A DNA stretch of 64,000 bases from Macrostomum lignano. Its lineage: Eukaryota. Shown in pieces: positions 20,332 to 64,000 of the stretch (the stretch's first letter is position 1; every line of letters starts with the position of its first letter). The notes beneath the pieces are model-generated. The model was not told the DNA's origin and did no database searches. It was given only the letters and a program-made list of their open reading frames with translations. The stretch spans positions 95,813 through 159,812 of the forward strand of contig NIVC01002364.1 of assembly GCA_002269645.1 (NCBI GenBank). Reading direction: 5' to 3'. A program made the position numbers and the translations under genes.

Positions 20332-20364
<33 letters not shown>

Positions 20365-36230: not shown

Positions 36231-36355
36231 TACTACAACAACTTAGTGGCATTAGTGAGAGTAGAATAAGGAAACAAAGAAATCTACAACATATATTAGG
36301 CCTATTTTCTAATATGATATTTGATTATATTATTATAAGAAACTTCAAATCACTT

Positions 36356-41965: not shown

Positions 41966-44900
41966 ATGGATGCCCAGACTGTTCGACTGGCGAGTTTCAG
42001 AGCCGAGGAGCTGGAGAACTTTGTCAGACACCCAAAGACTCGGCCTGCGCACCTCTCCAGCCGCACCATGGAGGCGCTCTTAATCGGCCATCCGCTCACT
42101 CGAATGCCTAAGGAGGCTTTCCGGTCTGCCGACGAAGGTGAGAGTTCGGCCTTCTGCTGAACCGGATGTAGCGCTGTTCCCTTGAGTCAATTCCTAGATA
42201 TATTTACCGGAAGTTCAGTCGTTCCCTGAATAAAAATCGGACAACTCTTCTTCTAGGGGAAGAAGACACGAAATTAACAGCCCGCTGTACACTCCTGTGT
42301 GAGTGTGTGCATGTGCGTGTGACTGCGTACGCATCCGCGCGCTTGTGTGCCTGCTCAGGGGAGTCGGCGGAATGGGCAGTAATGCCTCTCGCCGGTTGTG
42401 ACAATGTCGATTAAAGTCCGCCAGGATGCACACCACCCCTGCCTCTAATAAAAAAAATAGCAGTCTCTTCCTGGCTTTTCAAATTAATCAGTTCTTTGAA
42501 CTCAAAATTATGAGCCAATTATTTTTCATCTTAAGATCAATGATTAGTTATTTATGTTGGCAACAGATATGCATTCAAAAAGTTTTGTTTCGTTGACGCA
42601 TTTGCTAATTGAAGTTGCGCGAAAGCAAAATGCTGTCTGCATGCTGACGCCACAGGTAATTACTAGCTGGTCGAGGGGGGCTTAGAAATTTTTTGATAAT
42701 AGCTTTAATTTTCAGATACACCTGCATTGACGAATTAACAGGTGGCACCGAAGCACTGATTTCTCTATTGCATCTGTTAGCTGGAAACGCCACAATGTCA
42801 GGGTAATTTGTCAGTAAATTGGTTTATCCAGGGTGTAACTGTGATGTTTCGCACCGAAAAATATCTATGAATGTTGCAGTAAGGGGGTTTATCATAAGCA
42901 GGGGGCAGTGTGCACCCTGGCGCACTTTAAGGCACAACCGATTCAGGGCCACTGAGCTAGCTGCTAAAAATAGCTACGACCGCCTACGAATATAATTAGG
43001 GAATCCAAATCGTATTGAAATCTTCGAGAGAAGACAGTGGTAAATACCTGGATGCTAAAAATAGTTATCATGGGAATCCCCGTGGTAGTAAATCCGACAA
43101 TTTAGTGAGAACGAATTAGCTGCTAAAAATAGCTATAATTGCAAATTGCCAGGGAATCCTAATCGCATTGAAATCGTCGTAAAGACGGTGGTAAATATCT
43201 TGGGTACTAAAAATAGCTATCATCGGAAATCCCGGTGCTGGTAAATCCGACAATTCAGTGAGAATGAACTAGCTGCTAAAAATAGCTATAATTAGGGAAT
43301 CCCAACCGCATTGAAATCGTCGAGAAGAAAGTGGTAAATACCTGGATGCTAAAAATAGCTATCAGGGGAAATCCCGGTGCTGGTAAATCCGACAATTCAG
43401 TGAGAATGAATTAGCTGCTAAAAATAGCTATAGTTAGGGTATCTCTGTGTGTTCAGATCTCAAACAAGACGATACAAAAGCTGTGGCCATCAAACCGCAC
43501 TCTCACACAGGCAAGTCCGTCAGTGAAACGTTGAGCCTGAGCGAGCTGGGCAGCTCTCTGATGAACCTGTTCAGACGCCTGCTGGTGCCCTACATCCTGG
43601 CCTTCATAACTTGCACCTTTCTGTACCGCCTGTACCTCAAATTCAGTGACGAAGATGCTTTTTCTATGCGGATGCAAGGCCGTCCTAAAGGACGAAAATG
43701 TGAAAAAATTTCCCCCATTTATCCGAATAAAATCATTTGCTACGGGATCCTTGGTTTTACCTGCTTGTTTTTTACTGCGCTCGCCAGCTCGATTCGAAAA
43801 TTAGCTATTCGGTTCACCGACTTTATTGCGCTTCGAACTATCACCATGGCAACGTGTCATATCATGAGCCGGATTAGGCATTTGTATGGTCTGCTGCAAA
43901 CCACGGATCCCAATTGTGAGCCGACGTACTCAAAATTTTGTATTCTTTGAAAATCAACGCCCTCCAGGTGGCGCCATTCTTTATTGGGTCCTTCCGGTGG
44001 CGCCGTTACTTTATTGAATCCTTCAGGTGGCGCCATTCTTTATTGAGTCCTTCAGGTGGCGCTATTCTTTTATTGAATCCTTCAGGTGGCGCCACTCTTT
44101 ATTGAGTCCTTCAGGTGGCGCCATTCTTTATTGAATCCTTCAGGTGGCGCCATTCTTTATTGAGTCCTTCAGGTGGCGCCATTCTTTATTGAGTCCTTCA
44201 GGTGGCGCCATTCTTTATTGAATCCTTCAGGTGGCGCCATTCTTTATTGAATCCTTCAGGTGGCGCCACTCTTTATTGAGTCCTTCAGGTGGCGCCATTC
44301 TTTATTGAATCCTTCAGGTGGCGCCATTCTTTATTGAGTCCTTCAGGTGGCGCCATTCTTTATTGAATCCTTCAGGTGGCGCCATTCTTTATTGAATCCT
44401 TCAGGTGGCGCCATTCTTTATTGAATCCTTCAGGTGGCGCCATTCTTTATTGAAACCTTCGGGTGGCGCCACTCTTTATTGAGCCCTTCAGGTGGCGCCA
44501 TTCTTTATTGAGTCCTTCAGGTGGCGCCATTCTTTATTGAATCCTTCAGGTGGCGCCATTCTTTATTGAATCCTTCAGGTGGCGCCATTCTTTATTGAAT
44601 CCTTCAGGTGGCGCCATTCTTTATTGAATCCTTCAGGTGGCGCCATTTTTTATTGAATCCTTCAGATGGCGCCATTCTTTATTGAGTCCTTCAGGTAGCG
44701 CCATTCTTTATTGAGTCCTTCAGGTGGCGCCATTCTTTATTGAGTCCTTCAGGTGGCGCCACTCTTTATTGAGTCCTTCAGGTGGCGCCATTCTTTATTG
44801 AATCCTTCAGGTGGCGCCATTCTTTATTGAGTCCTTCAGGTGGCGCCATTCTTTTATTGAATCCTTCAGGTGGCGCCACTCTTTATTGAATCCTTCACGT

Positions 44901-47900
44901 GGCGCCACTCTTTATTGAATCCTTCAGGTGGCGCCACTCTTTATTGAATCCTTCAGGTGGCGCCATTCTTTATTGAATCCTTCAGGTGGCGCCATTCTTT
45001 ATTGAATCCTTCAGGTGGCGCCACTCTTTATTGAATCCTTCAGGTGGCGCCACTCTTTATTGAATCCTTCAGGTGGCGCCACTCTTTATTGAATCCTTCA
45101 GGTGGCGCCATTCTTTATTGAATTCTTCAGGTGGCGCCATTCTTTATTGAGTCCTTCAGGTGGCGCCATTCTTTATTGAATCCTTCAGGTGGCGCCATTC
45201 TTTATTGAATCCTTCAGGTGGCGCCATTCTTTATTGAATCCTTCAGGTGGCGCCATTCTTTATTGAATCCTTCAGGTGGCGCCATTCTTTATTGAATCCT
45301 TCAGGTGGCGCCATTCTTTATTGAGTCCTTCAGGTGGCGCCATTCTTTATTGAGTCCTTCAGGTGGCGCCACTCTTTATCGAGTCCTTCAGGTGGCGCCA
45401 TTCTTTATTGAGCCTTCAGGTGGCGCCATTCTTTATTGAATCCTTCAGGTGGCGCCATTCTTTATTGAATCCTTCAGGTGGCGCCATTCTTTATTGAATC
45501 CTTCCGGTGGCGCCGTTACTTTATTGAATCCTTCAGGTGGCGCCATTCTTTATTGAGTCCTTCAGGTGGCGCCATTCTTTTATTGAATCCTTCAGGTTGC
45601 GCCACTCTTTAATGAGTCCTTCAGGTGGCGCCATTCTTTATTGAATCCTTCAGGTGGCGCCATTCTTTATTGAATCCTTCCGGTGGCGCCGTTACTTTAT
45701 TGAATCCTTCAGGTGGCGCCATTCTTTATTGAGTCCTTCAGGTGGCGCCATTCTTTTATTGAATCCTTCAGGTGGCGCCACTCTTTAATGAGTCCTTCAG
45801 GTGGCGCCACTCTTTATTGAGCCCTTCAGGTGGCGCCATTCTTTATTGAGTCCTTCAGGTGGCGCCATTCTTTATTGAGTCCTTCAGGTGGCGCCATTCT
45901 TTATTGAATTCTTCAGGTGGCGCCATTCTTTATTGAGTCCTTCAGGTGGCGCCATTCTTTATTGAATCCTTCAGGTGGCGCCACTCTTTATTGAGCCCTT
46001 CAGGTGGCGCCATTCTTTATTGAATCCTTCAGGTGGCGCCATTCTTTATTGAATCCTTCAGGTGGCGCCATTCTTTATTGAATCCTTCAGGTGGCGCCAT
46101 TCTTTATTGAATCCTTCAGGTGGCGCCATTCTTTATTGAATCCTTCAGGTGGCGCCATTCTTTATTGAGTCCTTCAGGTGGCGCCATTCTTTATTGAGTC
46201 CTTCAGGTGGCGCCACTCTTTATCGAGTCCTTCAGGTGGCGCCATTCTTTATTGAGCCCTTCAGGTGGCGCCATTCTTTATTGAATCCTTCAGGTGGCGC
46301 CATTCTTTATTGAATCCTTCAGGTGGCGCCATTCTTTATTGAATCCTTCCGGTGGCGCCGTTACTTTATTGAATCCTTCAGGTGGCGCCATTCTTTATTG
46401 AGTCCTTCAGGTGGCGCCATTCTTTTATTGAATCCTTCAGGTTGCGCCACTCTTTAATGAGTCCTTCAGGTGGCGCCATTCTTTATTGAATCCTTCAGGT
46501 GGCGCCATTCTTTATTGAATCCTTCCGGTGGCGCCGTTACTTTATTGAATCCTTCAGGTGGCGCCATTCTTTATTGAGTCCTTCAGGTGGCGCCATTCTT
46601 TTATTGAATCCTTCAGGTGGCGCCACTCTTTAATGAGTCCTTCAGGTGGCGCCACTCTTTATTGAGCCCTTCAGGTGGCGCCATTCTTTATTGAGTCCTT
46701 CAGGTGGCGCCATTCTTTATTGAGTCCTTCAGGTGGCGCCATTCTTTATTGAATTCTTCAGGTGGCGCCATTCTTTATTGAGTCCTTCAGGTGGCGCCAT
46801 TCTTTATTGAAACCTTCGGGTGGCGCCACTCTTTATTGAGCCCTTCAGGTGGCGCCATTCTTTATTGAATCCTTCAGGTGGCGCCATTCTTTATTGAATC
46901 CTTCAGATGGCGCCATTCTTTATTGAGTCCTTCAGGTAGCGCCATTCTTTATTGAGTCCTTCAGGTGGCGCCATTCTTTATTGAATCCTTCAGGTGGCGC
47001 CATTCTTTATTGAATCCTTCAGGTGGCGCCATTCTTTATTGAATCCTTCAGGTGGCGCCATTCTTTATTGAATCCTTCAGATGGCGCCATTCTTTATTGA
47101 GTCCTTCAGGTAGCGCCATTCTTTATTGAGTCCTTCAGGTAGCGCCATTCTTTATTGAGTCCTTCAGGTGGCGCCACTCTTTATTGAGTCCTTTAGGTGG
47201 CGCCATAACCTCTTACTGCGCCATTAACGTGACCCTGTTAACTAATATTGTTTTAGTTTAGTAAAGACAATTCTAGTTAATAAATTTGTGATTATTAATT
47301 ACACCAGCCATCAAAGACAGGCCAAAGCCAATAAGCTACCACATCTGCTATCTGTTTGAGTCGTTTCTGCGCAGCCGTCTGCTCATGCTCGTCTGCAACT
47401 GCGTCCCGATCCTGCTCTGCATCATCTGCGTCATGGTGGACACCAGAATGGAACAACTGCTGATTCGATGGCAGCTCCTTATTGGTGAGACAATTAGCCA
47501 ATCTGCCAGTCTGCTTCCAATCTGCCAGTCTGCTTCCAGTCTGCCAGTCTGTTTTCAATCTGCCAGTCTGTTTCCAATTTGCCAGTCTGTTTCCAATCTG
47601 CCAGTCTGCTTCCGATCTGCCAGTCTGTTTCCAATCTGCCAGTCTGTTTTCAATTTGCCAGTCTGTTTCCAATCTGCCAGTCTGTTTCCAATCTGCCAGT
47701 CTGTTTTCAATCTGCCAGTCTGTTTTCAATTTGCCAGTCTGTTTCCAATCTGCCAGTCTGTTTCCAATCTGCCAGCCTGTTTCCAATCTGCCAGTCTGTT
47801 TTCAATTTGCCAGTCTGTTTCCAATCTGCCAGTCTGTTTCCAATCTGCCAGTCTGTTTCCAATTTGCCAGTCTGTTTCCAATCTGCCAGTCTGTTTCCAA

Positions 47901-50900
47901 TCTGCCAGTCTGTTTCCAATTTGCCAGTCTGTTTCCAATCTGCCAGTCTGTTTCCAATTTGCCAGTCTGTTTTCAATTTGCCAGTCTGTTTCCAGTCTGC
48001 CAGTCTGTTTTCAATTTGCCAGTCTGTTTTCAATTTGCCAGTCTGTTTTCAATTTGCCAGTCTGTTTCCGTATTATCTTATCAAAGTCAAATTTAAATTC
48101 TTAAAACGTTTTTTCAGCATTTCTACACGTATTTCTATTAAGCTGCGTCCTGTCAACCAGTTTAAAATCTGTTCTCTGGTTCAAGGCCTTCCACCTGATG
48201 TGCCTGGCGGTGTCTCTACTGTTTATTAATAAAATTCTCAACATCCACGAATTGATTTTGACAGCGTGGCAAATGCCAATATTTTTCTTTCAGGCTATCA
48301 GGTATAAACACTTGATTACCTGTTGATTTTAGAGTGCACTAGTGAGTGATACCTGTTGATTAGAGTGCACTAGTGAGTGATACCTGTTGATTAGAATGCA
48401 CTAGTGAGTGATACCTGTTGATTAGAGTGCACTAGTGAGTGATACCTGTTGATTTTAGAGTGCACTAGTGAGTGATACCTGTTGATTTTAGAGTGCACTA
48501 GTGAGTGATACCTGTTGATTAGAGTGCAGTAGTGAGTGATACCTGTTGATTTTAGAGTGCAGTAGTGAGTGATACCTGTTGATTAGAGTGCACTAGTGAG
48601 TGATACCTGTTGATTAGAATGCACTAGTGAGTGATACCTGTTGATTTTAGAGTGCACTAGTGAGTGATACCTGTTGATTTTAGAGTGCACTAGTGAGTGA
48701 TACCTGTTGATTAGAGTGCACTAGTGAGTGATACCTGTTGATTTTAGAGTGCACTAGTGAGTGATACCTGTTGATTTTAGAGTGCAGTAGTGAGTGATAC
48801 CTGTTGATTAGAGTGCACTAGTGAGTGATACCTGTTGATTAGAGTGCAGTAGTGAGTGATACCTGTTGATTAGAGTGCAGTAGTGAGTGATACCTGTTGA
48901 TTTTAGAGTGCACTAGTGAGTGATACCTGTTGATTAGAGTGCAGTAGTGAGTGATACCTGTTTATTTTAGAGTGCACTAGTGAGTGATACCTGTTGATTA
49001 GAGTGCACTAGTGAGTGATACCTGTTTATTTTAGAGTGCACTAGTGAGTGATACCTGTTGATTAGAGTGCACTAGTGAGTGATACCTGTTGATTTTAGAG
49101 TGCACTAGTGAGTGATACCTGTTGATTAGAGTGCAGTAGTGAGTGATACCTGTTGATTTTAGAGTGCACTAGTGAGTGATACCTGTTGATTAGAGGTGCA
49201 CTAGTGAGTGATACCTGTTGATTAGAGTGCACTAGTGAGTGATACCTGCTGATTAGAGTGTACGGTAGATTGTGACACCTGTTAATCGACTAATTCCAAT
49301 CTAAAAGAATCAAACTAACACGCAGATCTGTGGAAGTGTTCAACAGGACTTCAGAGGATCTAGAATCAGTATTAAAAAAATATGACAGCCTCAGAGAATC
49401 AAATTGGTTTTTTACTAACATCTTGCACGTGGCGTACATACTGACCGTCAGTCTGCTATTGAGGCTGGTTAACTTTCAAAAGCATCTTAATCTGCTTCAG
49501 GTGCTGTTTAGGTAAGTCTAAAAAAGGTTCCTAAATTGTATACAGAAAAATGGAAAATAATCACCTAAAACATTTTTTTCGAGAATAACACTATTTTAGA
49601 AATCTTTAATAAGACGGGCAGAACAGCTGAGCAGAGTGTACATCCCTGACTGATTAGAAAGTCGGGGTCGCTGTACACCCAGTGTGAGCTGTGTGGATGA
49701 GTGCGTGCCCTGCGTACAGCATTGGCTCTTGTCTGTGCTCAGGGAGTCAGAGAAATGAATTTCTTTTACAAAGAGCAACTACAAAAAACCGTCAACAATG
49801 CAGATACAACTTCCTGATGGACCCTGTTGAGTCTATCCTATTCCTTGTGGCTGTCTGCCAGCTACCGCCGCTAACCAGCATTCTCATTCTGCGACCGCAG
49901 CTGTCGAAACTCACTGAATCAGAGATGCAAAGCCTGCTGCTAATCGGATCTGTGCAGTGCCTTCTCACCAGTGCCAGGCCCTATCACCTGGCGCATAAGG
50001 ATTTTGTGCTGGGTTCTAGGATCATTTGCACGCTAGGTTTGGCTTTTTTCATTTTTAATAAACATTCTCCCTCGCTGAAGAATTACCCTAATCTCACAGG
50101 AATTCACCCCTAGCAGAACTTCCCCGCGGAATTCTCTTCGAAAGCATTCCCTCGCATGGATTTCCTTCAGTAAGATTCCCCATACAGGGAATCCCCTCAA
50201 AGAGATTCTCCTCAGAGGGATTCCCCTCAAAGAGGGATTCCCCTCAAAGAGGGATTTCCCTCACAGGGATTCCCCTCAAAGGAACTCACCTCATAGGGAT
50301 TCCTCTCAAATGGATTCCCCTCACAGGGATTCCTCTCAAATGGATTCCTTCAAAGGGATTCTCCGCACAGGGATTACCCTCACAGGGATTCTCCACAAAA
50401 TTCCCAAATTGATTCTCATTGCAGGGATTTCCCCACAGAAATTCCCCTCACAGGGATTCCCCTCATAGAGATTCCCCTCAAAGGGATTCTCCACAAAGAT
50501 TCCCTAAAGTGATTCTCATTGCAGGGATTCCCCTTCGCAGAGATTCCACTAACAGGGGTTCCCATCACACGGGGAATGAGCATGTCCCTGCGTTCATCAG
50601 GCTGCTAAATTCAAAACTATATTTTGTTTATCCCTAATCCCCCGGCTTCTAGGTCCCCTAGCAACTGTGTGCGCCACATTCGTGTCCAGTATAGTTTACC
50701 CTAGCAACAGCGACCAGAAGTCAGTCCTGCTGCAGCATAGTCAAGCGATAGTAACTCGCAATCAGTCCCTATCGCGCGGTCTCCGACGCCTGTTGGTGAA
50801 CAAAACTAGGATGGTCTGTCGCCTGCTGCTGCTGCTCATTGTGTCCCACTGCATCTTGGATCGGTGCGCTTATTATTTTCAAGTGATATTCAGCCTTACG

Positions 50901-53230: not shown

Positions 53231-53451
53231 TCAGAAACTTAAAAAATAACCAGCTCCGCCAGAAAACTCATCAATTAACTGACTGCCGGCACGGATAGCG
53301 GCTGCTGCTGCTGCTGCTGCTGCTGCTGCGGCTTGTGAGCAGCAAGTGAACCAAATGACGGATGCAGCGGCGAGATCAGAATGCTCGCTGCTGATCGTTA
53401 AAGCGCATTCTTGTCTCTTAGGCATGTCGCTGGCGTTGCTGACTTCAGAAG
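53231..53451 (-). CDS. Putative terminal exon of the gene hosting the exon array
   Basis: Same acceptor (tttcttttcctcgcag) as the array units, but a diverged 3' end (SQLIDEFSGGAGYFLSF-stop). An AATAAA lies on the minus strand at 53153-53148. Confidence 0.5.
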
Positions 53452-53938
53452 CTGCGAGGAAAAGAAATCAATTAAGATAGGCTTGCTTTAGTAATCATTA
53501 ATAGGCTATAAAGGAACCCTTTAATAGAACGTGTTCAACTAATGCTGGGTCTGTTTTGAAAAGTCAGAACTCAGAAGTAGTCGCGATTAGAATCAGTATT
53601 GTCCCAATAAGTGCGACCCAACAAATGCTGTTCAAAAAATAGGCCTGGCTGCAATGTCCCAATAAATGCCCAACAAATTACTAGCCTTGAGCTAGGCTGG
53701 GCTGTGTTTACTATTCATTGCGTTTGTAGCTTGTGTCCCAACAATGCCACTGAGATTGTTGCATTGCTTTTGAATTGTGCTCTACCAGGTAACACAAGTA
53801 CTCTGGTGTACAATACTTCTACAGCAGATAATACTCACCCAAAACAGATCGTCTCTTTCTCTTTAATCCTGTGCCAGACGGGTTTTCTTCAGATCCACCA
53901 GAAAATTCACAAATAGACTGACTGCCTGCACGGATAGC

Positions 53939-53971
<33 letters not shown>

Positions 53972-54582
53972 GGCTTGTGAGCAGCAAGGGAACCAAATGA
54001 CGGATGCAGCGGCGAGATCAGAATGCTCGCTGCTGATCGTTAAAGCGCATTCTTGTCTCTTAGGCATGTCGCTGGCGTTGCTGACTTCAGAAGCTGCGAG
54101 GAAAAGAAATCAATTAAGATAGGCTTGCTTTAGTAATCATTAATAGGCTATAAAGGAACCCTTTAATAGAACGTGTTCAACTAATGCTGGGTCTGTTTTG
54201 AAAAGTCAGAACTCAGAAGTAGTCGCGATTAGAATCAGTATTGTCCCAATAAGTGCGACCCAACAAATGCTGTTCAAAAAATAGGCCTGGCTGCAATGTC
54301 CCAATAAATGCCCAACAAATTACTAGCCTTGAGCTAGGCTGGGCTGTGTTTACTATTCTTTGCGTTTGTATAGCTTGTGTCCCAACAATGCCACTGAGAT
54401 TGTTGCATTGCTTTTGAATTGTGCTCTACCAGGTAACACAAGTACTCTGGTGTACAATACTTCTACAGCAGATAATACTCACCCAAAACAGATCGTCTCT
54501 TTCTCTTTAATCCTGTGCCAGACGGGTTATCTTCAGATCCACCAGAAAATTCACAAATAGACTGACTGCCTGCACGGATAGC

Positions 54583-54618
<36 letters not shown>

Positions 54619-55244
54619 GGCTTGTGAGCAGCAAGTGAACCAAATGACGGATGCAGCGGCGAGATCAGAATGCTCGCTGCTGATCGTTAAAGCGCATTCT
54701 TGTCTCTTAGGCATGTCGCTGGCGTTGCTGACTTCAGAAGCTGCGAGGAAAAGAAATCAATTAAGATAGGCTTGCTTTAGTAATCATTAATAGGCTATAA
54801 AGGAACCCTTTAATAGAACGTGTTCAACTAATGCTGGGTCTGTTTTGAAAAGTCAGAACTCAGAAGTAGTCGCGATTAGAATCAGTATTGTCCCAATAAG
54901 TGCGACCCAACAAATGCTGTTCAAAAAATAGGCCTGGCTGCAATGTCCCAATAAATGCCCAACAAATTACTAGCCTTGAGCTAGGCTGGGCTGTGTTTAC
55001 TATTCTTTGCGTTTGTATAGCTTGTGTCCCAACAATGCCACTGAGATTGTTGCATTGCTTTTGAATTGTGCTCTACCAGGTAACACAAGTACTCTGGTGT
55101 ACAATACTTCTACAGCAGATAATACTCACCCAAAACAGATCGTCTCTTTCTCTTTAATCCTGTGCCAGACGGGTTATCTTCAGATCCACCAGAAAATTCA
55201 CAAATAGACTGACTGCCTGCACGGATAGCGGCTGCTGCTGCTGC

Positions 55245-55623
55245 TTTTCTTTCTTTCTTTCTTTTTCGGGTCACGGACATTGTAGCTAGACGTAGCTAAT
55301 AGGACCGGGGCGTAGCCCCATGCAGCCGGGGCGCTGACCCTGCGCGGGCGGGCAGTAGACGGCGGAATCCAATTTGCGGCCTGCGGCGGGTGGCCAGAGA
55401 GCGTGGGGACCCGAGTCCCGGTGCGCAGGGCTCCTCCGCAGACCGACTTACGCTGTAAAAACCGCCATCCACCGCCAACCCAACGTTGGGGGACAGCTCT
55501 CCCAGGCTGCATACCCGGAGGTGAGACCAATTCGTCACCCCGTCGATGGCAGGGACGCACGGAGCTCCTGCCACATTGGCGGGGTGTCCAGGGGCGCGAC
55601 GTGGACGCTGGTCTCGTGCCACC

Positions 55624-55624
<1 letters not shown>
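55245..55624 (-). mobile_element. 380-bp non-autonomous retroposon (SINE/SIDE-like) with a 5' ribozyme and 3' (GAAA)n tail, inserted in a (CAG)n tract
   Basis: Present in only one array unit and absent from the others. It is GC-rich, splits the CTG run, and has the tail GAAAAAGAAAGAAAGAAAGAAAA on the minus strand. The two flanking tracts together are longer than any intact tract, consistent with a target-site duplication. Confidence 0.85.
55523..55624 (-). ncRNA. HDV/CPEB3-like self-cleaving ribozyme (predicted nested double pseudoknot)
   Basis: GGGUGGC-AC-GAGACCA-GCG-UCCACGU-CGC-GCCCCU-GG-A-CACCCCG...CGGGGUG-ACGAAU-UGGUCUC. P2 (7 bp), P3 (3 bp), L3 UCCACGU, P1.1 CC/GG, P4 and the J4/2 C-G-A-A are all in the canonical order. 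P1 needs a bulged U. Confidence 0.85.
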
Positions 55625-55656
<32 letters not shown>

Positions 55657-56265
55657 GGCTTGTGAGCAGCAAGTGAACCAAATGACGGATGCAGCGGCGA
55701 GATCAGAATGCTCGCTGCTGATCGTTAAAGCGCATTCTTGTCTCTTAGGCATGTCGCTGGCGTTGCTGACTTCAGAAGCTGCGAGGAAAAGAAATCAATT
55801 AAGATAGGCTTGCTTTAGTAATCATTAATAGGCTATAAAGGAACCCTTTAATAGAACGTGTTCAACTAATGCTGGGTCTGTTTTGAAAAGTCAGAACTCA
55901 GAAGTAGTCGCGATTAGAATCAGTATTGTCCCAATAAGTGCGACCCAACAAATGCTGTTCAAAAAATAGGCCTGGCTGCAATGTCCCAATAAATGCCCAA
56001 CAAATTACTAGCCTTGAGCTAGGCTGGGCTGTGTTTACTATTCATTGCGTTTGTAGCTTGTGTCCCAACAATGCCACTGAGATTGTTGCATTGCTTTTGA
56101 ATTGTGCTCTACCAGGTAACACAAGTACTCTGGTGTACAATACTTCTACAGCAGATAATACTCACCCAAAACAGATCGTCTCTTTCTCTTTAATCCTGTG
56201 CCAGACGGGTTTTCTTCAGATCCACCAGAAAATTCACAAATAGACTGACTGCCTGCACGGATAGC

Positions 56266-56301
<36 letters not shown>

Positions 56302-56910
56302 GGCTTGTGAGCAGCAAGTGAACCAAATGACGGATGCAGCGGCGAGATCAGAATGCTCGCTGCTGATCGTTAAAGCGCATTCTTGTCTCTTAGGCATGTC
56401 GCTGGCGTTGCTGACTTCAGAAGCTGCGAGGAAAAGAAATCAATTAAGATAGGCTTGCTTTAGTAATCATTAATAGGCTATAAAGGAACCCTTTAATAGA
56501 ACGTGTTCAACTAATGCTGGGTCTGTTTTGAAAAGTCAGAACTCAGAAGTAGTCGCGATTAGAATCAGTATTGTCCCAATAAGTGCGACCCAACAAATGC
56601 TGTTCAAAAAATAGGCCTGGCTGCAATGTCCCAATAAATGCCCAACAAATTACTAGCCTTGAGCTAGGCTGGGCTGTGTTTACTATTCTTTGCGTTTGTA
56701 GCTTGTGTCCCAACAATGCCACTGAGATTGTTGCATTGCTTTTGAATTGTGCTCTACCAGGTAACACAAGTACTCTGGTGTACAATACTTCTACAGCAGA
56801 TAATACTCACCCAAAACAGATCGTCTCTTTCTCTTTAATCCTGTGCCAGACGGGTTTTCTTCAGATCCACCAGAAAATTCACAAATAGACTGACTGCCTG
56901 CACGGATAGC

Positions 56911-56943
<33 letters not shown>

Positions 56944-57551
56944 GGCTTGTGAGCAGCAAGTGAACCAAATGACGGATGCAGCGGCGAGATCAGAATGCTC
57001 GCTGCTGATCGTTAAAGCGCATTCTTGTCTCTTAGGCATGTCGCTGGCGTTGCTGACTTCAGAAGCTGCGAGGAAAAGAAATCAATTAAGATAGGCTTGC
57101 TTTAGTAATCATTAATAGGCTATAAAGGAACCCTTTAATAGAACGTGTTCAACTAATGCTGGGTCTGTTTTGAAAAGTCAGAACTCAGAAGTAGTCGCGA
57201 TTAGAATCAGTATTGTCCCAATAAGTGCGACCCAACAAATGCTGTTCAAAAAATAGGCCTGGCTGCAATGTCCCAATAAATGCCCAACAAATTACTAGCC
57301 TTGAGCTAGGCTGGGCTGTGTTTACTATTCTTGCGTTTGTAGCTTGTGTCCCAACAATGCCACTGAGATTGTTGCATTGCTTTTGAATTGTGCTCTACCA
57401 GGTAACACAAGTACTCTGGTGTACAATACTTCTACAGCAGATAATACTCACCCAAAACAGATCGTCTCTTTCTCTTTAATCCTGTGCCAGACGGGTTTTC
57501 TTCAGATCCACCAGAAAATTCACAAATAGACTGACTGCCTGCACGGATAGC

Positions 57552-57584
<33 letters not shown>

Positions 57585-58193
57585 GGCTTGTGAGCAGCAA
57601 GTGAACCAAATGACGGATGCAGCGGCGAGATCAGAATGCTCGCTGCTGATCGTTAAAGCGCATTCTTGTCTCTTAGGCATGTCGCTGGCGTTGCTGACTT
57701 CAGAAGCTGCGAGGAAAAGAAATCAATTAAGATAGGCTTGCTTTAGTAATCATTAATAGGCTATAAAGGAACCCTTTAATAGAACGTGTTCAACTAATGC
57801 TGGGTCTGTTTTGAAAAGTCAGAACTCAGAAGTAGTCGCGATTAGAATCAGTATTGTCCCAATAAGTGCGACCCAACAAATGCTGTTCAAAAAATAGGCC
57901 TGGCTGCAATGTCCCAATAAATGCCCAACAAATTACTAGCCTTGAGCTAGGCTGGGCTGTGTTTACTATTCATTGCGTTTGTAGCTTGTGTCCCAACAAT
58001 GCCACTGAGATTGTTGCATTGCTTTTGAATTGTGCTCTACCAGGTAACACAAGTACTCTGGTGTACAATACTTCTACAGCAGATAATACTCACCCAAAAC
58101 AGATCGTCTCTTTCTCTTTAATCCTGTGCCAGACGGGTTTTCTTCAGATCCACCAGAAAATTCACAAATAGACTGACTGCCTGCACGGATAGC

Positions 58194-58226
<33 letters not shown>

Positions 58227-58836
58227 GGCTTGTGAGCAGCAAGTGAACCAAATGACGGATGCAGCGGCGAGATCAGAATGCTCGCTGCTGATCGTTAAAG
58301 CGCATTCTTGTCTCTTAGGCATGTCGCTGGCGTTGCTGACTTCAGAAGCTGCGAGGAAAAGAAATCAATTAAGATAGGCTTGCTTTAGTAATCATTAATA
58401 GGCTATAAAGGAACCCTTTAATAGAACGTGTTCAACTAATGCTGGGTCTGTTTTGAAAAGTCAGAACTCAGAAGTAGTCGCGATTAGAATCAGTATTGTC
58501 CCAATAAGTGCGACCCAACAAATGCTGTTCAAAAAATAGGCCTGGCTGCAATGTCCCAATAAATGCCCAACAAATTACTAGCCTTGAGCTAGGCTGGGCT
58601 GTGTTTACTATTCTTTGCGTTTGTATAGCTTGTGTCCCAACAATGCCACTGAGATTGTTGCATTGCTTTTGAATTGTGCTCTACCAGGTAACACAAGTAC
58701 TCTGGTGTACAATACTTCTACAGCAGATAATACTCACCCAAAACAGATCGTCTCTTTCTCTTTAATCCTGTGCCAGACGGGTTTCTTCAGATCCACCAGA
58801 AAATTCACAAATAGACTGACTGCCTGCACGGATAGC

Positions 58837-58872
<36 letters not shown>

Positions 58873-59481
58873 GGCTTGTGAGCAGCAAGTGAACCAAATG
58901 ACGGATGCAGCGGCGAGATCAGAATGCTCGCTGCTGATCGTTAAAGCGCATTCTTGTCTCTTAGGCATGTCGCTGGCGTTGCTGACTTCAGAAGCTGCGA
59001 GGAAAAGAAATCAATTAAGATAGGCTTGCTTTAGTAATCATTAATAGGCTATAAAGGAACCCTTTAATAGAACGTGTTCAACTAATGCTGGGTCTGTTTT
59101 GAAAAGTCAGAACTCAGAAGTAGTCGCGATTAGAATCAGTATTGTCCCAATAAGTGCGACCCAACAAATGCTGTTCAAAAAATAGGCCTGGCTGCAATGT
59201 CCCAATAAATGCCCAACAAATTACTAGCCTTGAGCTAGGCTGGGCTGTGTTTACTATTCATTGCGTTTGTAGCTTGTGTCCCAACAATGCCACTGAGATT
59301 GTTGCATTGCTTTTGAATTGTGCTCTACCAGGTAACACAAGTACTCTGGTGTACAATACTTCTACAGCAGATAATACTCACCCAAAACAGATCGTCTCTT
59401 TCTCTTTAATCCTGTGCCAGACGGGTTTTCTTCAGATCCACCAGAAAATTCACAAATAGACTGACTGCCTGCACGGATAGC

Positions 59482-59517
<36 letters not shown>

Positions 59518-60126
59518 GGCTTGTGAGCAGCAAGTGAACCAAATGACGGATGCAGCGGCGAGATCAGAATGCTCGCTGCTGATCGTTAAAGCGCATTCTT
59601 GTCTCTTAGGCATGTCGCTGGCGTTGCTGACTTCAGAAGCTGCGAGGAAAAGAAATCAATTAAGATAGGCTTGCTTTAGTAATCATTAATAGGCTATAAA
59701 GGAACCCTTTAATAGAACGTGTTCAACTAATGCTGGGTCTGTTTTGAAAAGTCAGAACTCAGAAGTAGTCGCGATTAGAATCAGTATTGTCCCAATAAGT
59801 GCGACCCAACAAATGCTGTTCAAAAAATAGGCCTGGCTGCAATGTCCCAATAAATGCCCAACAAATTACTAGCCTTGAGCTAGGCTGGGCTGTGTTTACT
59901 ATTCATTGCGTTTGTAGCTTGTGTCCCAACAATGCCACTGAGATTGTTGCATTGCTTTTGAATTGTGCTCTACCAGGTAACACAAGTACTCTGGTGTACA
60001 ATACTTCTACAGCAGATAATACTCACCCAAAACAGATCGTCTCTTTCTCTTTAATCCTGTGCCGGACGGGTTTTCTTCAGATCCACCAGAAAATTCACAA
60101 ATAGACTGACTGCCTGCACGGATAGC

Positions 60127-60159
<33 letters not shown>

Positions 60160-60766
60160 GGCTTGTGAGCAGCAAGTGAACCAAATGACGGATGCAGCGG
60201 CGAGATCAGAATGCTCGCTGCTGATCGTTAAAGCGCATTCTTGTCTCTTAGGCATGTCGCTGGCGTTGCTGACTTCAGAAGCTGCGAGGAAAAGAAATCA
60301 ATTAAGATAGGCTTGCTTTAGTAATCATTAATAGGCTATAAAGGAACCCTTTAATAGAACGTGTTCAACTAATGCTGGGTCTGTTTTGAAAAGTCAGAAC
60401 TCAGAAGTAGTCGCGATTAGAATCAGTATTGTCCCAATAAGTGCGACCCAACAAATGCTGTTCAAAAAATAGGCCTGGCTGCAATGTCCCAATAAATGCC
60501 CAACAAATTACTAGCCTTGAGCTAGGCTGGGCTGTGTTTACTATTCATTGCGTTTGTAGCTTGTGTCCCAACAATGCCACTGAGATTGTTGCATTGCTTT
60601 TGAATTGTGCTCTACCAGGTAACACAAGTACTCTGGTGTACAATACTTCTACAGCAGATAATACTCACCCAAAACAGATCGTCTCTTTCTCTTTAATCCT
60701 GTGCCGGACGGGTTTTCTTCAGATCCACCAGAAAATTCACAAATAGACTGACTGCCTGCACGGATA

Positions 60767-60801
<35 letters not shown>

Positions 60802-61409
60802 GGCTTGTGAGCAGCAAGTGAACCAAATGACGGATGCAGCGGCGAGATCAGAATGCTCGCTGCTGATCGTTAAAGCGCATTCTTGTCTCTTAGGCATGTC
60901 GCTGGCGTTGCTGACTTCAGAAGCTGCGAGGAAAAGAAATCAATTAAGATAGGCTTGCTTTAGTAATCATTAATAGGCTATAAAGGAACCCTTTAATAGA
61001 ACGTGTTCAACTAATGCTGGGTCTGTTTTGAAAAGTCAGAACTCAGAAGTAGTCGCGATTAGAATCAGTATTGTCCCAATAAGTGCGACCCAACAAATGC
61101 TGTTCAAAAAATAGGCCTGGCTGCAATGTCCCAATAAATGCCCAACAAATTACTAGCCTTGAGCTAGGCTGGGCTGTGTTTACTATTCATTGCGTTTGTA
61201 GCTTGTGTCCCAACAATGCCACTGAGATTGTTGCATTGCTTTTGAATTGTGCTCTACCAGTAACACAAGTACTCTGGTGTACAATACTTCTACAGCAGAT
61301 AATACTCACCCAAAACAGATCGTCTCTTTCTCTTTAATCCTGTGCCGGACGGGTTTTCTTCAGATCCACCAGAAAATTCACAAATAGACTGACTGCCTGC
61401 ACGGATAGC

Positions 61410-61442
<33 letters not shown>

Positions 61443-63961
61443 GGCTTGTGAGCAGCAAGTGAACAAATGACGGATGCAGCGGCGAGATCAGAATGCTCGC
61501 TGCTGATCGTTAAAGCGCATTCTTGTCTCTTAGGCATGTCGCTGGCGTTGCTGACTTCAGAAGCTGCGAGGAAAAGAAATCAATTAAGATAGGCTTGCTT
61601 TAGTAATCATTAATAGGCTATAAAGGAACCCTTTAATAGAACGTGTTCAACTAATGCTGGGTCTGTTTTGAAAAGTCAGAACTCAGAAGTAGTCGCGATT
61701 AGAATCAGTATTGTCCCAATAAGTGCGACCCAACAAATGCTGTTCAAAAAATAGGCCTGGCTGCAATGTCCCAATAAATGCCCAACAAATTACTAGCCTT
61801 GAGCTAGGCTGGGCTGTGTTTACTATTCATTGCGTTTGTAGCTTGTGTCCCAACAATGCCACTGAGATTGTTGCATTGCTTTTGAATTGTGCTCTACCAG
61901 GTAACACAAGTACTCTGGTGTACAATACTTCTACAGCAGATAATACTCACCCAAAACAGATCGTCTCTTTCTCTTTAATCCTGTGCCGGACGGGTTTTCT
62001 TCAGATCCACCAGAAAATTCACAAATAGACTGACTGCCTGCATGGATAGCGGCTGCTGCTGCTGCGGCTGCTGCTGCGGCTTGTGAGCAGCAAGTGAACC
62101 AAATGACGGATGCAGCGGCGAGATCAGAATGCTCGCTGCTGATCGTTAAAGCGCATTCTTGTCTCTTAGGCATGTCGCTGGCGTTGCTGACTTCAGAAGC
62201 TGCGAGGAAAAGAAATCAATTAAGATAGGCTTGCTTTAGTAATCATTAATAGGCTATAAAGGAACCCTTTAATAGAACGTGTTCAACTAATGCTGGGTCT
62301 GTTTTGAAAAGTCAGAACTCAGAAGTAGTCGCGATTAGAATCAGTATTGTCCCAATAAGTGCGACCCAACAAATGCTGTTCAAAAAATAGGCCTGGCTGC
62401 AATGTCCCAATAAATGCCCAACAAATTACTAGCCTTGAGCTAGGCTGGGCTGTGTTTACTATTCATTGCGTTTGTAGCTTGTGTCCCAACAATGCCACTG
62501 AGATTGTTGCATTGCTTTTGAATTGTGCTCTAAGTAACACAAGTACTCTGGTGTACAATACTTCTACAGCAGATAATACTCACCCAAAACAGATCGTCTC
62601 TTTCTCTTTAATCCTGTGCCGGACGGGTTTTCTTCAGATCCACCAGAAAATTCACAAATAGACTGACTGCCTGCACGGATAGCGGCTGCTGCTGCTGCTG
62701 CTGCTGCTGCTGCGGCTTGTGAGCAGCAAGTGAACCAAATGACGGATGCAGCGGCGAGATCAGAATGCTCGCTGCTGATCGTTAAAGCGCATTCTTGTCT
62801 CTTAGGCATGTCGCTGGCGTTGCTGACTTCAGAAGCTGCGAGGAAAAGAAATCAATTAAGATAGGCTTGCTTTAGTAATCATTAATAGGCTATAAAGGAA
62901 CCCTTTAATAGAACGTGTTCAACTAATGCTGGGTCTGTTTTGAAAAGTCAGAACTCAGAAGTAGTCGCGATTAGAATCAGTATTGTCCCAATAAGTGCGA
63001 CCCAACAAATGCTGTTCAAAAAATAGGCCTGGCTGCAATGTCCCAATAAATGCCCAACAAATTACTAGCCTTGAGCTAGGCTGGGCTGTGTTTACTATTC
63101 TTTGCGTTTGTAGCTTGTGTCCCAACAATGCCACTGAGATTGTTGCATTGCTTTTGAATTGTGCTCTACCAGGTAACACAAGTACTCTGGTGTACAATAC
63201 TTCTACAGCAGATAATACTCACCCAAAACAGATCGTCTCTTTCTCTTTAATCCTGTGCCGGACGGTTTTCTTCAGATCCACCAGAAAATTCACAAATAGA
63301 CTGACTGCCTGCACGGATAGCGGCTGCTGCTGCTGCTGCTGCTGCTGCTGCGGCTTGTGAGCAGCAAGTGAACCAAATGACGGATGCAGCGGCGAGATCA
63401 GAATGCTCGCTGCTGATCGTTAAAGCGCATTCTTGTCTCTTAGGCATGTCGCTGGCGTTGCTGACTTCAGAAGCTGCGAGGAAAAGAAATCAATTAAGAT
63501 AGGCTTGCTTTAGTAATCATTAATAGGCTATAAAGGAACCCTTTAATAGAACGTGTTCAACTAATGCTGGGTCTGTTTTGAAAAGTCAGAACTCAGAAGT
63601 AGTCGCGATTAGAATCAGTATTGTCCCAATAAGTGCGACCCAACAAATGCTGTTCAAAAAATAGGCCTGGCTGCAATGTCCCAATAAATGCCCAACAAAT
63701 TACTAGCCTTGAGCTAGGCTGGGCTGTGTTTACTTTCATTGCGTTTGTAGCTTGTGTCCCAACAATGCCACTGAGATTGTTGCATTGCTTTTGAATTGTG
63801 CTCTACCAGTAACACAAGTACTCTGGTGTACAATACTTCTACAGCAGATAATACTCACCCAAAACAGATCGTCTCTTTCTCTTTAATCCTGTGCCAGACG
63901 GGTTTTCTTCAGATCACCAGAAAATTCACAAATAGACTGACTGCCTGCACGGATAGCGGCA

Positions 63962-63993
<32 letters not shown>

Positions 63994-64000
63994 GGCTTTG

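What the first reader, a model, noticed from the sequence alone, without database searches (positions are those of the whole stretch)
55245..55624. Ribozyme-capped 380-bp SINE-like retroposon inserted into a (CAG)n microsatellite
Seen: the insert's 5' boundary coincides to the base with the predicted ribozyme cleavage site (G+1). The 3' end is a (GAAA)n tail, there is no tRNA/7SL/5S head and no recognisable protein, and 16 sister units show the empty site. Known: R2, RTE and L1Tc non-LTR elements use 5' HDV-like ribozymes to cut themselves out of read-through transcripts, and R2 has internally deleted non-autonomous derivatives (SIDEs). Inference: this is a complete, recent, promoter-less non-autonomous element mobilised by target-primed reverse transcription from a partner LINE, possibly with a preference for CAG/CTG repeats. 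I know of no described family with this sequence.
Basis: partly seen in the sequence, partly recalled or inferred. Interest (0 to 1): 0.85.

Follow-up and report, generated by a model that had tools for sequence, protein, structure and literature searches.

The report
Ribozyme-capped short retroposon in CAG repeat
A 380-base non-coding mobile element, probably from the flatworm Macrostomum lignano, starts exactly at the cut site of a hepatitis-delta-like self-cleaving RNA motif and sits inside a CAG repeat; a second near-identical copy also sits in a CAG repeat, so it looks like a new, repeat-targeting example of a known kind of parasitic retroelement.

Summary
Window 55245-55624 is a clean 380-bp insertion (sense on the minus strand) in the (CTG)n tract of one unit of a ~642-bp tandem array. 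The other units are empty and 99.4-100% identical. The first 102 nt fit the HDV/CPEB3 ribozyme fold with a canonical core, and the predicted cut lies exactly at the insert's first base. The Rfam score is below threshold (26.8 bits against 50) and P1 has one bulged U. The 3' end is GAAAAA(GAAA)3GAAAA. There is no protein domain, tRNA, 7SL or 5S head, or B box. The filled repeat tract is 11 nt longer than both neighbouring tracts and out of triplet phase, which points to a target-site duplication of about 11 nt (or 14).

New evidence: a Macrostomum lignano gene model (UniRef100_A0A1I8HT69) carries a near-identical copy at another locus, directly after a polyQ (CAG) run and in the same orientation.

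Best reading: a young, non-autonomous non-LTR retroposon, like R2 SIDEs or NARTc. It would be read through from host transcripts, trimmed at its 5' end by its own ribozyme, and inserted into CAG repeats by an unidentified LINE.

Not shown: ribozyme activity, the partner LINE, and copy number, because the host genome was not searchable. It is a new member of a known kind, of moderate interest.

The parts
55245..55624 (-). Whole 380-nt element: 64% G+C in a ~45% G+C array, non-coding.
   Evidence: It is the only interruption among 17 near-identical array units. There is no other copy in the window. No Pfam domain is found in any long frame. As RNA the whole element folds far better than shuffles, z = -4.84.
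55523..55624 (-). HDV/CPEB3-like self-cleaving ribozyme motif (element nt 1-102), with the predicted cut 5' of G at 55624.
- P1: GGGUGGC/GCCCCU, 6 bp, with G1.U35 and a bulged U4.
- P2: GAGACCA/UGGUCUC, 7 bp.
- P3: GCG/CGC.
- L3: UCCACGU.
- P1.1: GG with the CC of L3.
- P4: long, CACCCCG...CGGGGUG with an inner UGGCAGG/CCUGCCA.
- J4/2: ACGAAU, with C91 aligned to the catalytic C75 of HDV.
   Evidence: Full-length alignment to RF00094 at 26.8 bits, and a weaker hit to RF00622. P2 and P4 also appear in the minimum-free-energy fold. The descriptor scan finds this site alone in the window, and such a site is rare in shuffles.
55319..55513 (-). Central ~195-nt long imperfect hairpin (element nt 112-306). 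Its function is unknown. A candidate role is a structured RNA handle for the partner reverse transcriptase.
   Evidence: Fold of 55313-55517: -112.6 kcal/mol, z = -3.73, and 0 of 200 shuffles fold as well.
55283..55319 (-). Two short 3' hairpins just upstream of the tail: GGGGC-UAC-GCCCC and UAGCUA-CGUC-UAGCUA.
   Evidence: Seen in the MFE and centroid folds. Not significant on their own: z = -0.2.
55245..55267 (-). 3' simple-repeat tail GAAAAAGAAAGAAAGAAAGAAAA.
   Evidence: Read directly from the sequence. It abuts the resumed GCAGCAG tract.
55625..55635 (-). Upstream copy of the candidate 11-nt target-site duplication GCAGCAGCAGC. It lies within the upstream (CAG)n tract, 55625-55660.
   Evidence: The anchor-to-anchor tract is 85 nt in the filled unit (1 mod 3), against 65-74 nt in all the empty units (all 2 mod 3) and 74 nt in both neighbours. 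The excess is therefore 11 nt, which is 2 mod 3.
55234..55244 (-). Downstream copy of the candidate target-site duplication. The downstream tract is only 14 nt long (55231-55244). First-strand priming is inferred from the 3'-OH after C55244 on the plus (CTG) strand.
   Evidence: The exact length (2, 5, 8, 11 or 14 nt) cannot be fixed inside a microsatellite.
53285..64000 (.). Host target: a tandem array of ~642-bp units, each with a (CTG)10-13 tract. It runs off the end of the window.

Best explanation
This is a complete, very young copy of a short non-autonomous non-LTR retroposon. The host is probably Macrostomum lignano.

Proposed life cycle:
1. A copy sitting in a CAG tract in sense orientation is transcribed as part of a longer host transcript. 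This is inferred. The second copy lies in sense orientation inside a protein-coding gene model.
2. [quoted passage not shown] This is inferred from the fold and the boundary coincidence; no assay was done.
3. The structured body and the (GAAA)n tail are recognised in trans by the reverse transcriptase/endonuclease of an unidentified LINE (inferred).
4. That enzyme nicks the CTG strand of a CAG/CTG microsatellite (here 5'-...CTGC^TGCTG-3') and primes cDNA synthesis from the tail (target-primed reverse transcription). A staggered second nick gives a duplication of about 11 nt. The junction sequences and the out-of-phase tract excess are observed; the mechanism is inferred.

The element carries no protein and no pol III head. 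In design it is a SIDE/NARTc-type parasite, not a classical SINE.
For: - Clean single insertion in 1 of 17 units that are 99.4-100% identical.
- Tract excess of 11 nt, out of triplet phase, as expected for a target-site duplication and not for repeat slippage.
- Full-length HDV-model alignment with G1 at the first inserted base. It includes L3 UCCACGU, J4/2 CGAAU as in the HDV and CPEB3 consensus lines, a G1.U wobble, P1.1, a 7-bp P2 and a long P4.
- A descriptor hit unique in the window and absent at nt 1 in 20000 shuffles.
- Simple-repeat 3' tail.
- No domain, tRNA, 7SL, 5S or B box.
- Second copy. UniRef100_A0A1I8HT69 reads ...QPQQQQQQQPQR|GWHETSVHVAPLDTPPMWQEL... and matches the element's translation without an amino-acid difference over 21 + 5 + 51 residues.
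- The rest of that protein has no match in the window, so it is another locus.
- Literature. HDV-like ribozymes define the 5' end of R4, Dong, baggins and L1Tc. R2 SIDEs consist of a ribozyme plus a 3' UTR (PMC3774820, PMC3414825). NARTc shares the L1Tc ribozyme (PMC3383444). LINEs that target microsatellites are known (PMC3812793, PMC4640811).
Against: - The Rfam score is well below the gathering threshold. The hit is not listed in the whole-window, all-family search at E<=10; scaling the small-region E-value to the window gives about 9.
- P1 has a bulged U4. P1 mismatches are uncommon in HDV-like ribozymes and have been linked to loss of in vitro cleavage (PMC3774820).
- Only two copies are known.
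- The second copy is known only through a spliced gene model. Its junctions are therefore inferred from codons, and its 5' junction either has 2 extra nt or hides a predicted intron.
- No autonomous partner was found in the window.
- The six-frame protein searches found only P0001 and no LINE protein sharing the element's sequence.
- The species assignment rests on that one protein. A carboxylesterase exon of the window found no homologue in the database.
Confidence: 0.72

Rival explanations
1. The element is a real retroposon, but the HDV-like motif in it is inactive or only resembles a ribozyme. The 5' end would then be set by something else, such as an internal promoter or a transcription start site, and the match to the cut site would be fortuitous or a relic.
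For: The Rfam score is 26.8 bits, below the gathering score of 50. The hit is not reported in the whole-window searches. P1 has a bulge, and P1 defects abolish or weaken cleavage in other HDV-like ribozymes (PMC3774820). The 5' strand GGGUGGC has a perfect complement GCCACCC at element nt 231-237, within an 18-nt, 83% complementary repeat that spans the junction. That pairing could compete with P1.
Against: All the core positions are canonical, and the cut site coincides with the insert's first base. Such a hit arose at nt 1 in 0 of 20000 shuffles. The family is young, so a functional 5' processing device is expected to be intact. No pol III boxes were found.
Confidence: 0.12
2. The two copies are dead-on-arrival, internally deleted or otherwise defective copies of an autonomous LINE. 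They would not be members of a non-autonomous family that propagates on its own.
For: R2 SIDEs arise by internal deletion of full-length elements (PMC3414825). One reading frame stays open through the whole 380 nt, starting from an ATG 8 nt after the ribozyme. That could be a remnant of the parent's ORF.
Against: The second copy covers element nt 1-63 and 112-286 colinearly with only a 1-nt indel, and its inferred 3' junction lies in the tail. The same short architecture therefore occurs at two loci, which argues that the short form itself was copied. No frame shows RT or endonuclease similarity.
Confidence: 0.08
3. The insert is an assembly or sequencing artefact: a chimeric read or misjoin inside a nearly identical tandem array.
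For: The array units are 99.4-100% identical, which makes this a hard region to assemble. No independent contig containing either junction could be retrieved.
Against: Both flanks continue the same unit in register, with only the 11-nt tract excess. The insert has biologically coherent ends: a ribozyme cut site and a repeat tail. The same sequence occurs in an independent gene model, in the same kind of target.
Confidence: 0.03
4. The insert is a viroid-like, deltavirus-like or retrozyme-type circular RNA replicon captured as DNA.
For: Its size (380 nt), high G+C content, strongly structured rod-like centre and HDV-type ribozyme recall small circular RNAs.
Against: There is one ribozyme, in one polarity only. 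No ribozyme hit is found on the other strand, there is no tandem or dimeric arrangement and no delta-antigen-like ORF. The simple-repeat tail and the target-site-duplication signature point to LINE-mediated insertion.
Confidence: 0.02

Closest known systems
R2 SIDEs (Short Internally Deleted Elements) of Drosophila (Eickbush & Eickbush 2012, PMC3414825)
   Same: Short and non-coding. They have a 5' HDV-like ribozyme that trims the element out of a host co-transcript, plus a 3' region recognised by a LINE enzyme. They insert at a specific site by target-primed reverse transcription, and their 5' junctions vary.
   Different: SIDEs insert at the R2 or R1 site of 28S rDNA and share their ends with a known R2 or R1. 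This element sits in a CAG microsatellite, carries a (GAAA)n tail, comes from a flatworm, and its partner is unknown.
NARTc / L1Tc (and RIME/ingi, SIDER) of trypanosomatids (PMC3383444, PMC3185411, PMC4035085)
   Same: A non-autonomous short element carries the same 5' HDV-like ribozyme as its autonomous LINE. Cleavage occurs at the element's first nucleotide.
   Different: In L1Tc and NARTc the first 77 nt also act as an internal promoter (Pr77). The tail is poly(A), no microsatellite is targeted, and the host is a protist.
Dong / R4-clade LINEs
   Same: Dong inserts specifically into a microsatellite, (TAA)n (PMC3812793). R4 and Dong are listed among the elements whose HDV-like ribozyme cuts at the element's 5' end (PMC3774820). 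This is the closest combination of 'ribozyme cap plus microsatellite target'.
   Different: Dong is autonomous and several kb long, and its target is TAA. No sequence relationship to this element could be tested.
Other microsatellite-specific LINEs: Waldo (ACAY), Mino (AC), Kibi (TC), Koshi (TTC), Togen (TG), some HERO (PMC3812793, PMC4640811)
   Same: They integrate in a sequence-specific way into one strand of a simple repeat.
   Different: None of the sources I could read lists a CAG/CTG target. All of these are autonomous elements.
HDV genomic ribozyme (RF00094) and mammalian CPEB3 ribozyme (RF00622)
   Same: The same double-pseudoknot layout. P3-L3-P3 is GCG-UCCACGU-CGC here, against GCG-UUCACGU-CGC in the CPEB3 consensus. 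J4/2 is CGAAU as in both consensus lines, and the cut site has a G1.U wobble.
   Different: The scores are below both gathering thresholds. P1 has a bulged U, P4 is much longer, and the genomic context is a mobile element.
Perere-3 (RTE clade) of Schistosoma mansoni with a 5' twister-variant ribozyme (PMC8501958)
   Same: A flatworm non-LTR element with a 5' self-cleaving ribozyme next to the target-site duplication, a short tandem-repeat 3' tail ((GTAA)n) and transcription from host promoters.
   Different: It uses a different ribozyme class, is autonomous, and is not site-specific.

Membership tests
HDV-like self-cleaving ribozyme | Nested double pseudoknot with helices in the order P1-P2-P3-P3'-P1'-P1.1-P4-P2' | tested here: met
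   Full-length alignment to RF00094. By hand: P1 6 bp, P2 7 bp, P3 3 bp, P1.1 2 bp, P4 7+7 bp. The descriptor hit is unique in the window.
HDV-like self-cleaving ribozyme | Uninterrupted ~7-bp P1 closed by a G1.U wobble at the cut site | tested here: inconclusive
   The G1.U35 wobble is present, but U4 is bulged, giving 3 + 3 bp. P1 defects are uncommon and linked to weak in vitro cleavage (PMC3774820).
HDV-like self-cleaving ribozyme | Catalytic C in J4/2 and a CC in L3 that pairs with GG (P1.1) | tested here: met
   C91 in ACGAAU aligns with the model's C. L3 is UCCACGU, followed after P1' by GG.
HDV-like self-cleaving ribozyme | Score at or above the Rfam gathering threshold | tested here: not met
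   RF00094 scores 26.8 bits against 50, and RF00622 scores 14.4 against 35. There is no hit at gathering.
HDV-like self-cleaving ribozyme | Site-specific self-cleavage | not testable with these tools
   Needs a co-transcriptional cleavage assay.
Non-autonomous non-LTR retroposon of the SIDE/NARTc type | Short, with no RT/endonuclease ORF | tested here: met
   380 nt. No Pfam hit in any frame. Protein searches find only a host gene model that carries another copy.
Non-autonomous non-LTR retroposon of the SIDE/NARTc type | Insertion hallmarks of target-primed reverse transcription: a 3' tail at one junction and a target-site duplication or small target change | tested here: met
   The (GAAA)n tail abuts the target. 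The tract is 11 nt longer than in the neighbours and out of triplet phase. The exact duplication length cannot be resolved.
Non-autonomous non-LTR retroposon of the SIDE/NARTc type | Multiple dispersed copies | tested here: inconclusive
   Two loci are known: the window and UniRef100_A0A1I8HT69. The genome-wide copy number could not be obtained.
Non-autonomous non-LTR retroposon of the SIDE/NARTc type | 5' and/or 3' end shared with an autonomous LINE of the same genome | not testable with these tools
   No flatworm genome can be searched here. No RT was found in the window's large ORFs, though the whole window was not scanned in six frames.
Classical SINE | Head derived from tRNA, 7SL or 5S, with an internal pol III promoter | tested here: not met
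   No such Rfam hit at E<=10. ARAGORN finds nothing. No B box in the element.
R2 SIDE in the strict sense | Insertion at the R2 (or R1) site of 28S rDNA | tested here: not met
   The target is a (CAG)n tract in a 642-bp satellite, and there is no rRNA in the window.
Microsatellite-specific retroelement | Independent copies lie in the same repeat motif and in the same orientation | tested here: met
   2 of 2 copies follow a CAG run with the element's sense strand on the CAG strand. The sample is only two, and the second copy is read from protein only.
Retrozyme, or viroid- or deltavirus-like circular RNA | Ribozymes of both polarities or in tandem repeats, and circular RNA | tested here: not met
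   A single ribozyme on one strand and a single unit. Circularity cannot be tested.

The most novel reading that the evidence does not exclude
This is the first retroelement family with true specificity for CAG/CTG repeats. It inserts in sense orientation, so that any transcribed CAG tract, including polyQ-coding exons such as the WD-repeat gene model carrying the second copy, supplies its promoter, and an HDV-like ribozyme then frees it. Such a family would be a natural, orientation-specific mutagen of polyglutamine tracts. Its unknown partner would be an endonuclease/RT that recognises CAG/CTG DNA.
Probability: 0.45. Interest if true: 0.65.

Novelty: new member of a known kind. Interest (0 to 1): 0.42.

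Why it matters
If the family is confirmed genome-wide, it adds three things.
- A flatworm example of the 'ribozyme cap plus LINE 3' handle' strategy, so far documented for R2 SIDEs and trypanosomatid NARTc-type elements.
- A microsatellite target (CAG/CTG) that none of the sources I could read lists for target-specific retroelements.
- A hint that such elements can land in coding polyQ tracts and be partly exonised in gene models.

The partner enzyme would be a CAG/CTG-recognising nickase and reverse transcriptase. That is of interest for how LINE endonucleases acquire repeat specificity. The ribozyme, with its bulged P1, is a natural test case for how much P1 distortion the HDV fold tolerates. 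The design principle itself is already known, so this extends existing knowledge and does not overturn it.

Tried and rejected
Searches for further copies:
- Rfam at gathering found nothing on the whole window. A whole-window E<=10 search does not list the HDV hit. Only the 571-nt search does.
- blastn and a pattern search found no other copy in the window.
- A protein search with all six frames of the element concatenated, and a phmmer scan of 1.84 billion representatives with the open frame, found only P0001.
- A search for paralogues or empty-site alleles of the P0001 gene found none.
- Exact-product look-ups found nothing on record. They covered P0001, four ORFs overlapping the element or its junctions, and a satellite ORF. 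I therefore obtained no independent contig and no source record.
- Exact scans found nothing in metagenome contigs or genome contigs, and the degenerate-core scan of viral contigs also found nothing.

Relatives of the ribozyme core:
- A degenerate-core scan of metagenomes gave 16 loci. Most are G+C-rich chance matches.
- L002, L004 and L005 look like genuine HDV/CPEB3-like ribozymes of unidentified eukaryotes, but none has an RT downstream. They do not identify a partner clade.

Species check:
- The carboxylesterase exon found no homologue at E<=1e-5.

Partner LINE in the window:
- The large ORFs are almost all translations of tandem repeats. The only real domain is COesterase.

Readings rejected:
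- Classical SINE, because there is no pol III head.
- Helitron (MINE-1-like), because the ends are not TC...CTRR.
- R2 SIDE in the strict sense, because the target is not in rDNA.
- Deltavirus-like or retrozyme, because there is a single ribozyme in one polarity.
- Other P1 registers, including upstream CAG bases, pair worse than the bulged-U4 model.

Full report
**What is in the sequence.**
From 53285 to the end of the window there is a tandem array of ~642-bp units. Each unit contains a (CTG)10-13 tract between two fixed anchors. Seventeen units are visible. In 15 complete units the anchor-to-anchor segment is 65-74 nt. The last unit is cut by the window end but shows an intact (GCT)12. In the unit starting at 55215 the segment is 465 nt, because 380 bp (55245-55624) are inserted into the tract. 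With the insert removed, that unit is 99.4-100% identical to all the others. The insertion is therefore younger than the last homogenisation of the array. The insert is 64% G+C in a ~45% G+C background and occurs once in the window.

**Orientation and ends.**
On the minus strand the junctions read ...CAGCAGCAGC|GGGTGGCACGAGACC... and ...GAAAAAGAAAGAAAGAAAGAAAA|GCAGCAGCAGCAGCCGC. The element's sense strand is therefore the CAG strand. G at 55624 is the first base that cannot be part of the tract.

The tract segment of the filled unit, without the insert, is 85 nt. All empty units have 65, 68, 71 or 74 nt, all 2 mod 3, and both neighbours have 74. The excess of 11 nt is not a multiple of three, so repeat slippage alone does not explain it. 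A target-site duplication of length 2 mod 3 does. The simplest case is 11 nt (GCAGCAGCAGC). The maximum is 14 nt, because the downstream tract is only 14 nt long.

On the target-primed reverse transcription model, the CTG strand was nicked after C55244 (5'-...CTGC^TGCTG-3') and cDNA synthesis started on the GAAA tail. This step is inference.

**The ribozyme.**
A 571-nt Rfam search aligns the complete HDV_ribozyme model (positions 1-89) to 55522-55626 on the minus strand. The model's G1 falls on 55624, exactly the first inserted base. Reading the alignment gives these parts:
- P1: GGGUGGC/GCCCCU, with the characteristic G1.U wobble but a bulged U4.
- P2: GAGACCA/UGGUCUC.
- P3: GCG/CGC.
- L3: UCCACGU.
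- P1.1: GG pairing with the CC of L3.
- P4: a long helix, CACCCCG...CGGGGUG with an inner UGGCAGG/CCUGCCA.
- J4/2: ACGAAU, whose C aligns with the catalytic C.

The L3 and J4/2 strings are nearly the same as in the HDV and CPEB3 consensus lines printed by cmscan. P2 and P4 are also found by plain MFE folding.

The statistics need care. The score is 26.8 bits against a gathering score of 50. E = 0.083 for 571 nt x 4227 families, or about 2e-5 for this family alone. The hit appears neither at gathering nor in the whole-window E<=10 search. Taken blind, it would not stand out.

As a control I wrote an HDV-like descriptor. It was written after seeing the sequence and allows one P1 bulge, so it is somewhat biased. 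It finds one site in the 128 kb of both strands, with its cut at 55624. Sixty block-shuffled windows give 0.017 hits on average. Of 20000 shuffles of the G+C-rich element, 15 contain any hit and none has a hit at nt 1.

The coincidence of fold and boundary is therefore far beyond chance. Activity is untested. The P1 bulge is a real caveat: Eickbush and co-workers note that P1 mismatches are uncommon in HDV-like ribozymes and go with loss of in vitro cleavage (PMC3774820).

**The rest of the element.**
No long frame has a Pfam domain. There is no tRNA, 7SL, 5S or snRNA similarity at E<=10, no ARAGORN hit and no B box.

As RNA the whole element is much more stable than shuffles (z = -4.84). This is because nt 112-306 form one long imperfect hairpin (z = -3.73). 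Two small hairpins precede the tail. I take the structured body plus the tail as the likely handle for a LINE enzyme. That is inference.

One frame is open through all 380 nt, from an ATG 8 nt after the ribozyme. In 64% G+C sequence that is weak evidence, but it could be a remnant of a parent ORF.

**A second copy and the probable host.**
I searched the six translated frames of the element, concatenated, against the 5.8-billion-protein collection. The single hit was UniRef100_A0A1I8HT69, a 428-aa WD-repeat gene model of Macrostomum lignano. Its residues 271-347 are element sequence:
- GWHETSVHVAPLDTPPMWQEL corresponds to element nt 1-63.
- WESCP and QRWVGGGW...STARPRR correspond to nt ~112-286, with no amino-acid difference over those 21, 5 and 51 residues.
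- A frame change there is explained by one missing C in a C5 run.
- There are two predicted GT..AG introns inside the element.

The rest of the protein has no match in the window, so this is another locus.

Directly upstream the model reads QPQQQQQQQPQR. The second copy therefore also follows a CAG run in the same orientation. Its 5' junction codons (CAG CGN GGN TGG) imply one of two things: two extra nucleotides relative to the copy here, which would be ordinary 5'-junction variation for this kind of insertion (PMC3414825), or a predicted splice acceptor in the CAG tract.

Downstream, 'RRKQQK' fits a splice acceptor in the (GAAA)n tail followed by AAGCAGCAGAAG. That would be tail, then a short CAG run, then the host sequence. 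This is inference from codons.

Two of two copies lie in CAG tracts in the same orientation, and their sequences are nearly identical. That supports a young family that targets CAG repeats. It also makes M. lignano, or a very close relative, the likely source of the window. A carboxylesterase exon of the window found no database homologue, so the species call rests on this one protein.

**What could not be obtained.**
No flatworm genome can be searched with these tools. Exact-product look-ups found nothing for P0001, four ORFs overlapping the element or its junctions, and one satellite ORF. The phmmer scan of the representative library found only P0001. The metagenome and genome exact scans and the viral degenerate-core scan were empty.

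A degenerate scan for the ribozyme core in metagenomes gave 16 loci. L002, L004 and L005 look like real HDV/CPEB3-like ribozymes of unidentified eukaryotes, but none has a reverse transcriptase behind it. The window itself holds no RT among its large ORFs, which are nearly all translated tandem repeats.

Copy number, the distribution of 5' ends, target statistics and the autonomous partner therefore remain open.

**Mechanism proposed.**
1. A resident copy in a transcribed CAG tract is read through from a host promoter. This is inferred. The second copy is in sense orientation inside a gene model.
2. The ribozyme cuts 5' of G1 and defines the RNA's 5' end. This is inferred from the fold and the boundary.
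3. A LINE protein binds the structured 3' part and tail in trans (inferred).
4. The CTG strand of a CAG/CTG repeat is nicked, cDNA synthesis is primed on the tail, and a staggered second nick gives the ~11-nt duplication. The junctions and the phase shift are shown; the enzymology is inferred.

I put 0.72 on this overall reading. The rivals are:
- A ribozyme relic that no longer cuts (0.12).
- Defective copies of a LINE that do not form a self-propagating short family (0.08).
- An assembly artefact (0.03).
- A captured circular-RNA replicon (0.02).

**Comparison with what is known.**
The design is that of R2 SIDEs: a ribozyme plus a LINE 3' end (PMC3414825). It is also that of NARTc, which shares the L1Tc ribozyme (PMC3383444, PMC3185411). 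Ribozyme cleavage at the element's own first base is reported for R4, Dong, baggins and L1Tc (PMC3774820). Dong is also microsatellite-specific, for (TAA)n (PMC3812793).

The other microsatellite targets described in the sources I could read are ACAY, AC, TC, TTC and TG (PMC3812793, PMC4640811). I found no mention of CAG/CTG. I also found no paper linking Macrostomum to such ribozymes or elements.

In flatworms, the schistosome element Perere-3 uses a twister-type ribozyme in the same position and has a (GTAA)n tail (PMC8501958).

This element is not a classical SINE, because it has no pol III head. It is not an R2 SIDE in the strict sense, because it is not in rDNA. It works like a SIDE. Whether it is related to any named LINE clade cannot be tested here.

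**Verdict.**
I rate it a new member of a known kind: a ribozyme-capped non-autonomous non-LTR retroposon with a probable new target specificity. Interest is moderate (0.42). It would rise if a genome-wide survey confirms strict CAG targeting and hits in coding polyQ tracts.

Noticed in passing
window 53285-64000: A tandem array of at least 17 units of ~642 bp that are 99.4-100% identical. Each unit has a (CTG)10-13 tract and a conserved 82-83-aa ATG ORF on the minus strand (MPKRQECALTISSEHSDLAAASVIWFTCCSQ(A)n IRAGSQ...). Whether the array is transcribed or coding is unknown.
   Followed up: partly
window 55383-55400 and 55612-55629: An 18-nt, 83% complementary inverted repeat. It pairs the element's 5' end plus 5 nt of upstream CAG flank (GCAGCGGGUGGCACGAGA) with internal nt 225-242 (UCUCUGGCCACCCGCCGC). 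It includes a perfect complement of the P1 5' strand. It could compete with P1, or it could be chance: I estimate roughly 0.2 for any such pair arising in this region.
   Followed up: partly
window 36345-36482: A near-perfect ~60-bp-stem palindromic hairpin: -81.7 kcal/mol, z = -14.3. It gives sub-threshold hits to the mir-249 and mir-96 models on both strands. It looks like a MITE or a foldback.
   Followed up: partly
window 28905-29699 (-): An exon-like ORF matching the C-terminal part of the carboxylesterase/cholinesterase fold (Pfam COesterase, 5e-19), followed by a hydrophobic segment. It resembles neuroligin or another cholinesterase-like adhesion protein. It found no homologue at E<=1e-5 in the 5.8-billion-protein collection.
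   Followed up: partly
window 740-2200, 6385-7000, 19860-20780, 25800-27650, 43961-47206, 47498-48069, 48317-49260: The window is dominated by micro- and minisatellite arrays. Examples are a 29-bp unit x112, a 19-bp unit x30, a 31-bp unit x30 and a ~1.8-kb array that produces a spurious 606-aa ORF. Almost all long ORFs are translations of repeats.
   Followed up: no
L004 1276-1340 (-) and L005 542-606 (-); L005 2096-3135 (+): Metagenome contigs of an unidentified eukaryote carry an HDV/CPEB3-like ribozyme candidate with the same P3-L3-P3 core (CAGCGUCCACGUCGC) and a perfect 7-bp P1 (GGGGGAC/GUCCUCU). It scores 25.4 bits against RF00622, E = 0.0022. It lies ~1.5 kb upstream of an 18S rRNA gene on the opposite strand, among ~400-bp repeats and an (ATCT)n tract.
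   Followed up: partly
L002 1-70 (+): Another metagenome contig starts inside an apparent HDV-like ribozyme with the same core, a CACAUCAC/GUGAUGUG P4 and an ACUAAU J4/2. The 5' strands are cut off by the contig end, and there is no RT-like ORF in the 1.7 kb downstream.
   Followed up: partly
UniRef100_A0A1I8HT69 (P0001), residues 271-347: This M. lignano WD-repeat gene model contains 77 residues translated from the retroposon, in two frames joined by predicted introns. Either the element has been exonised or, more likely, this is an annotation artefact worth flagging in that proteome.
   Followed up: yes
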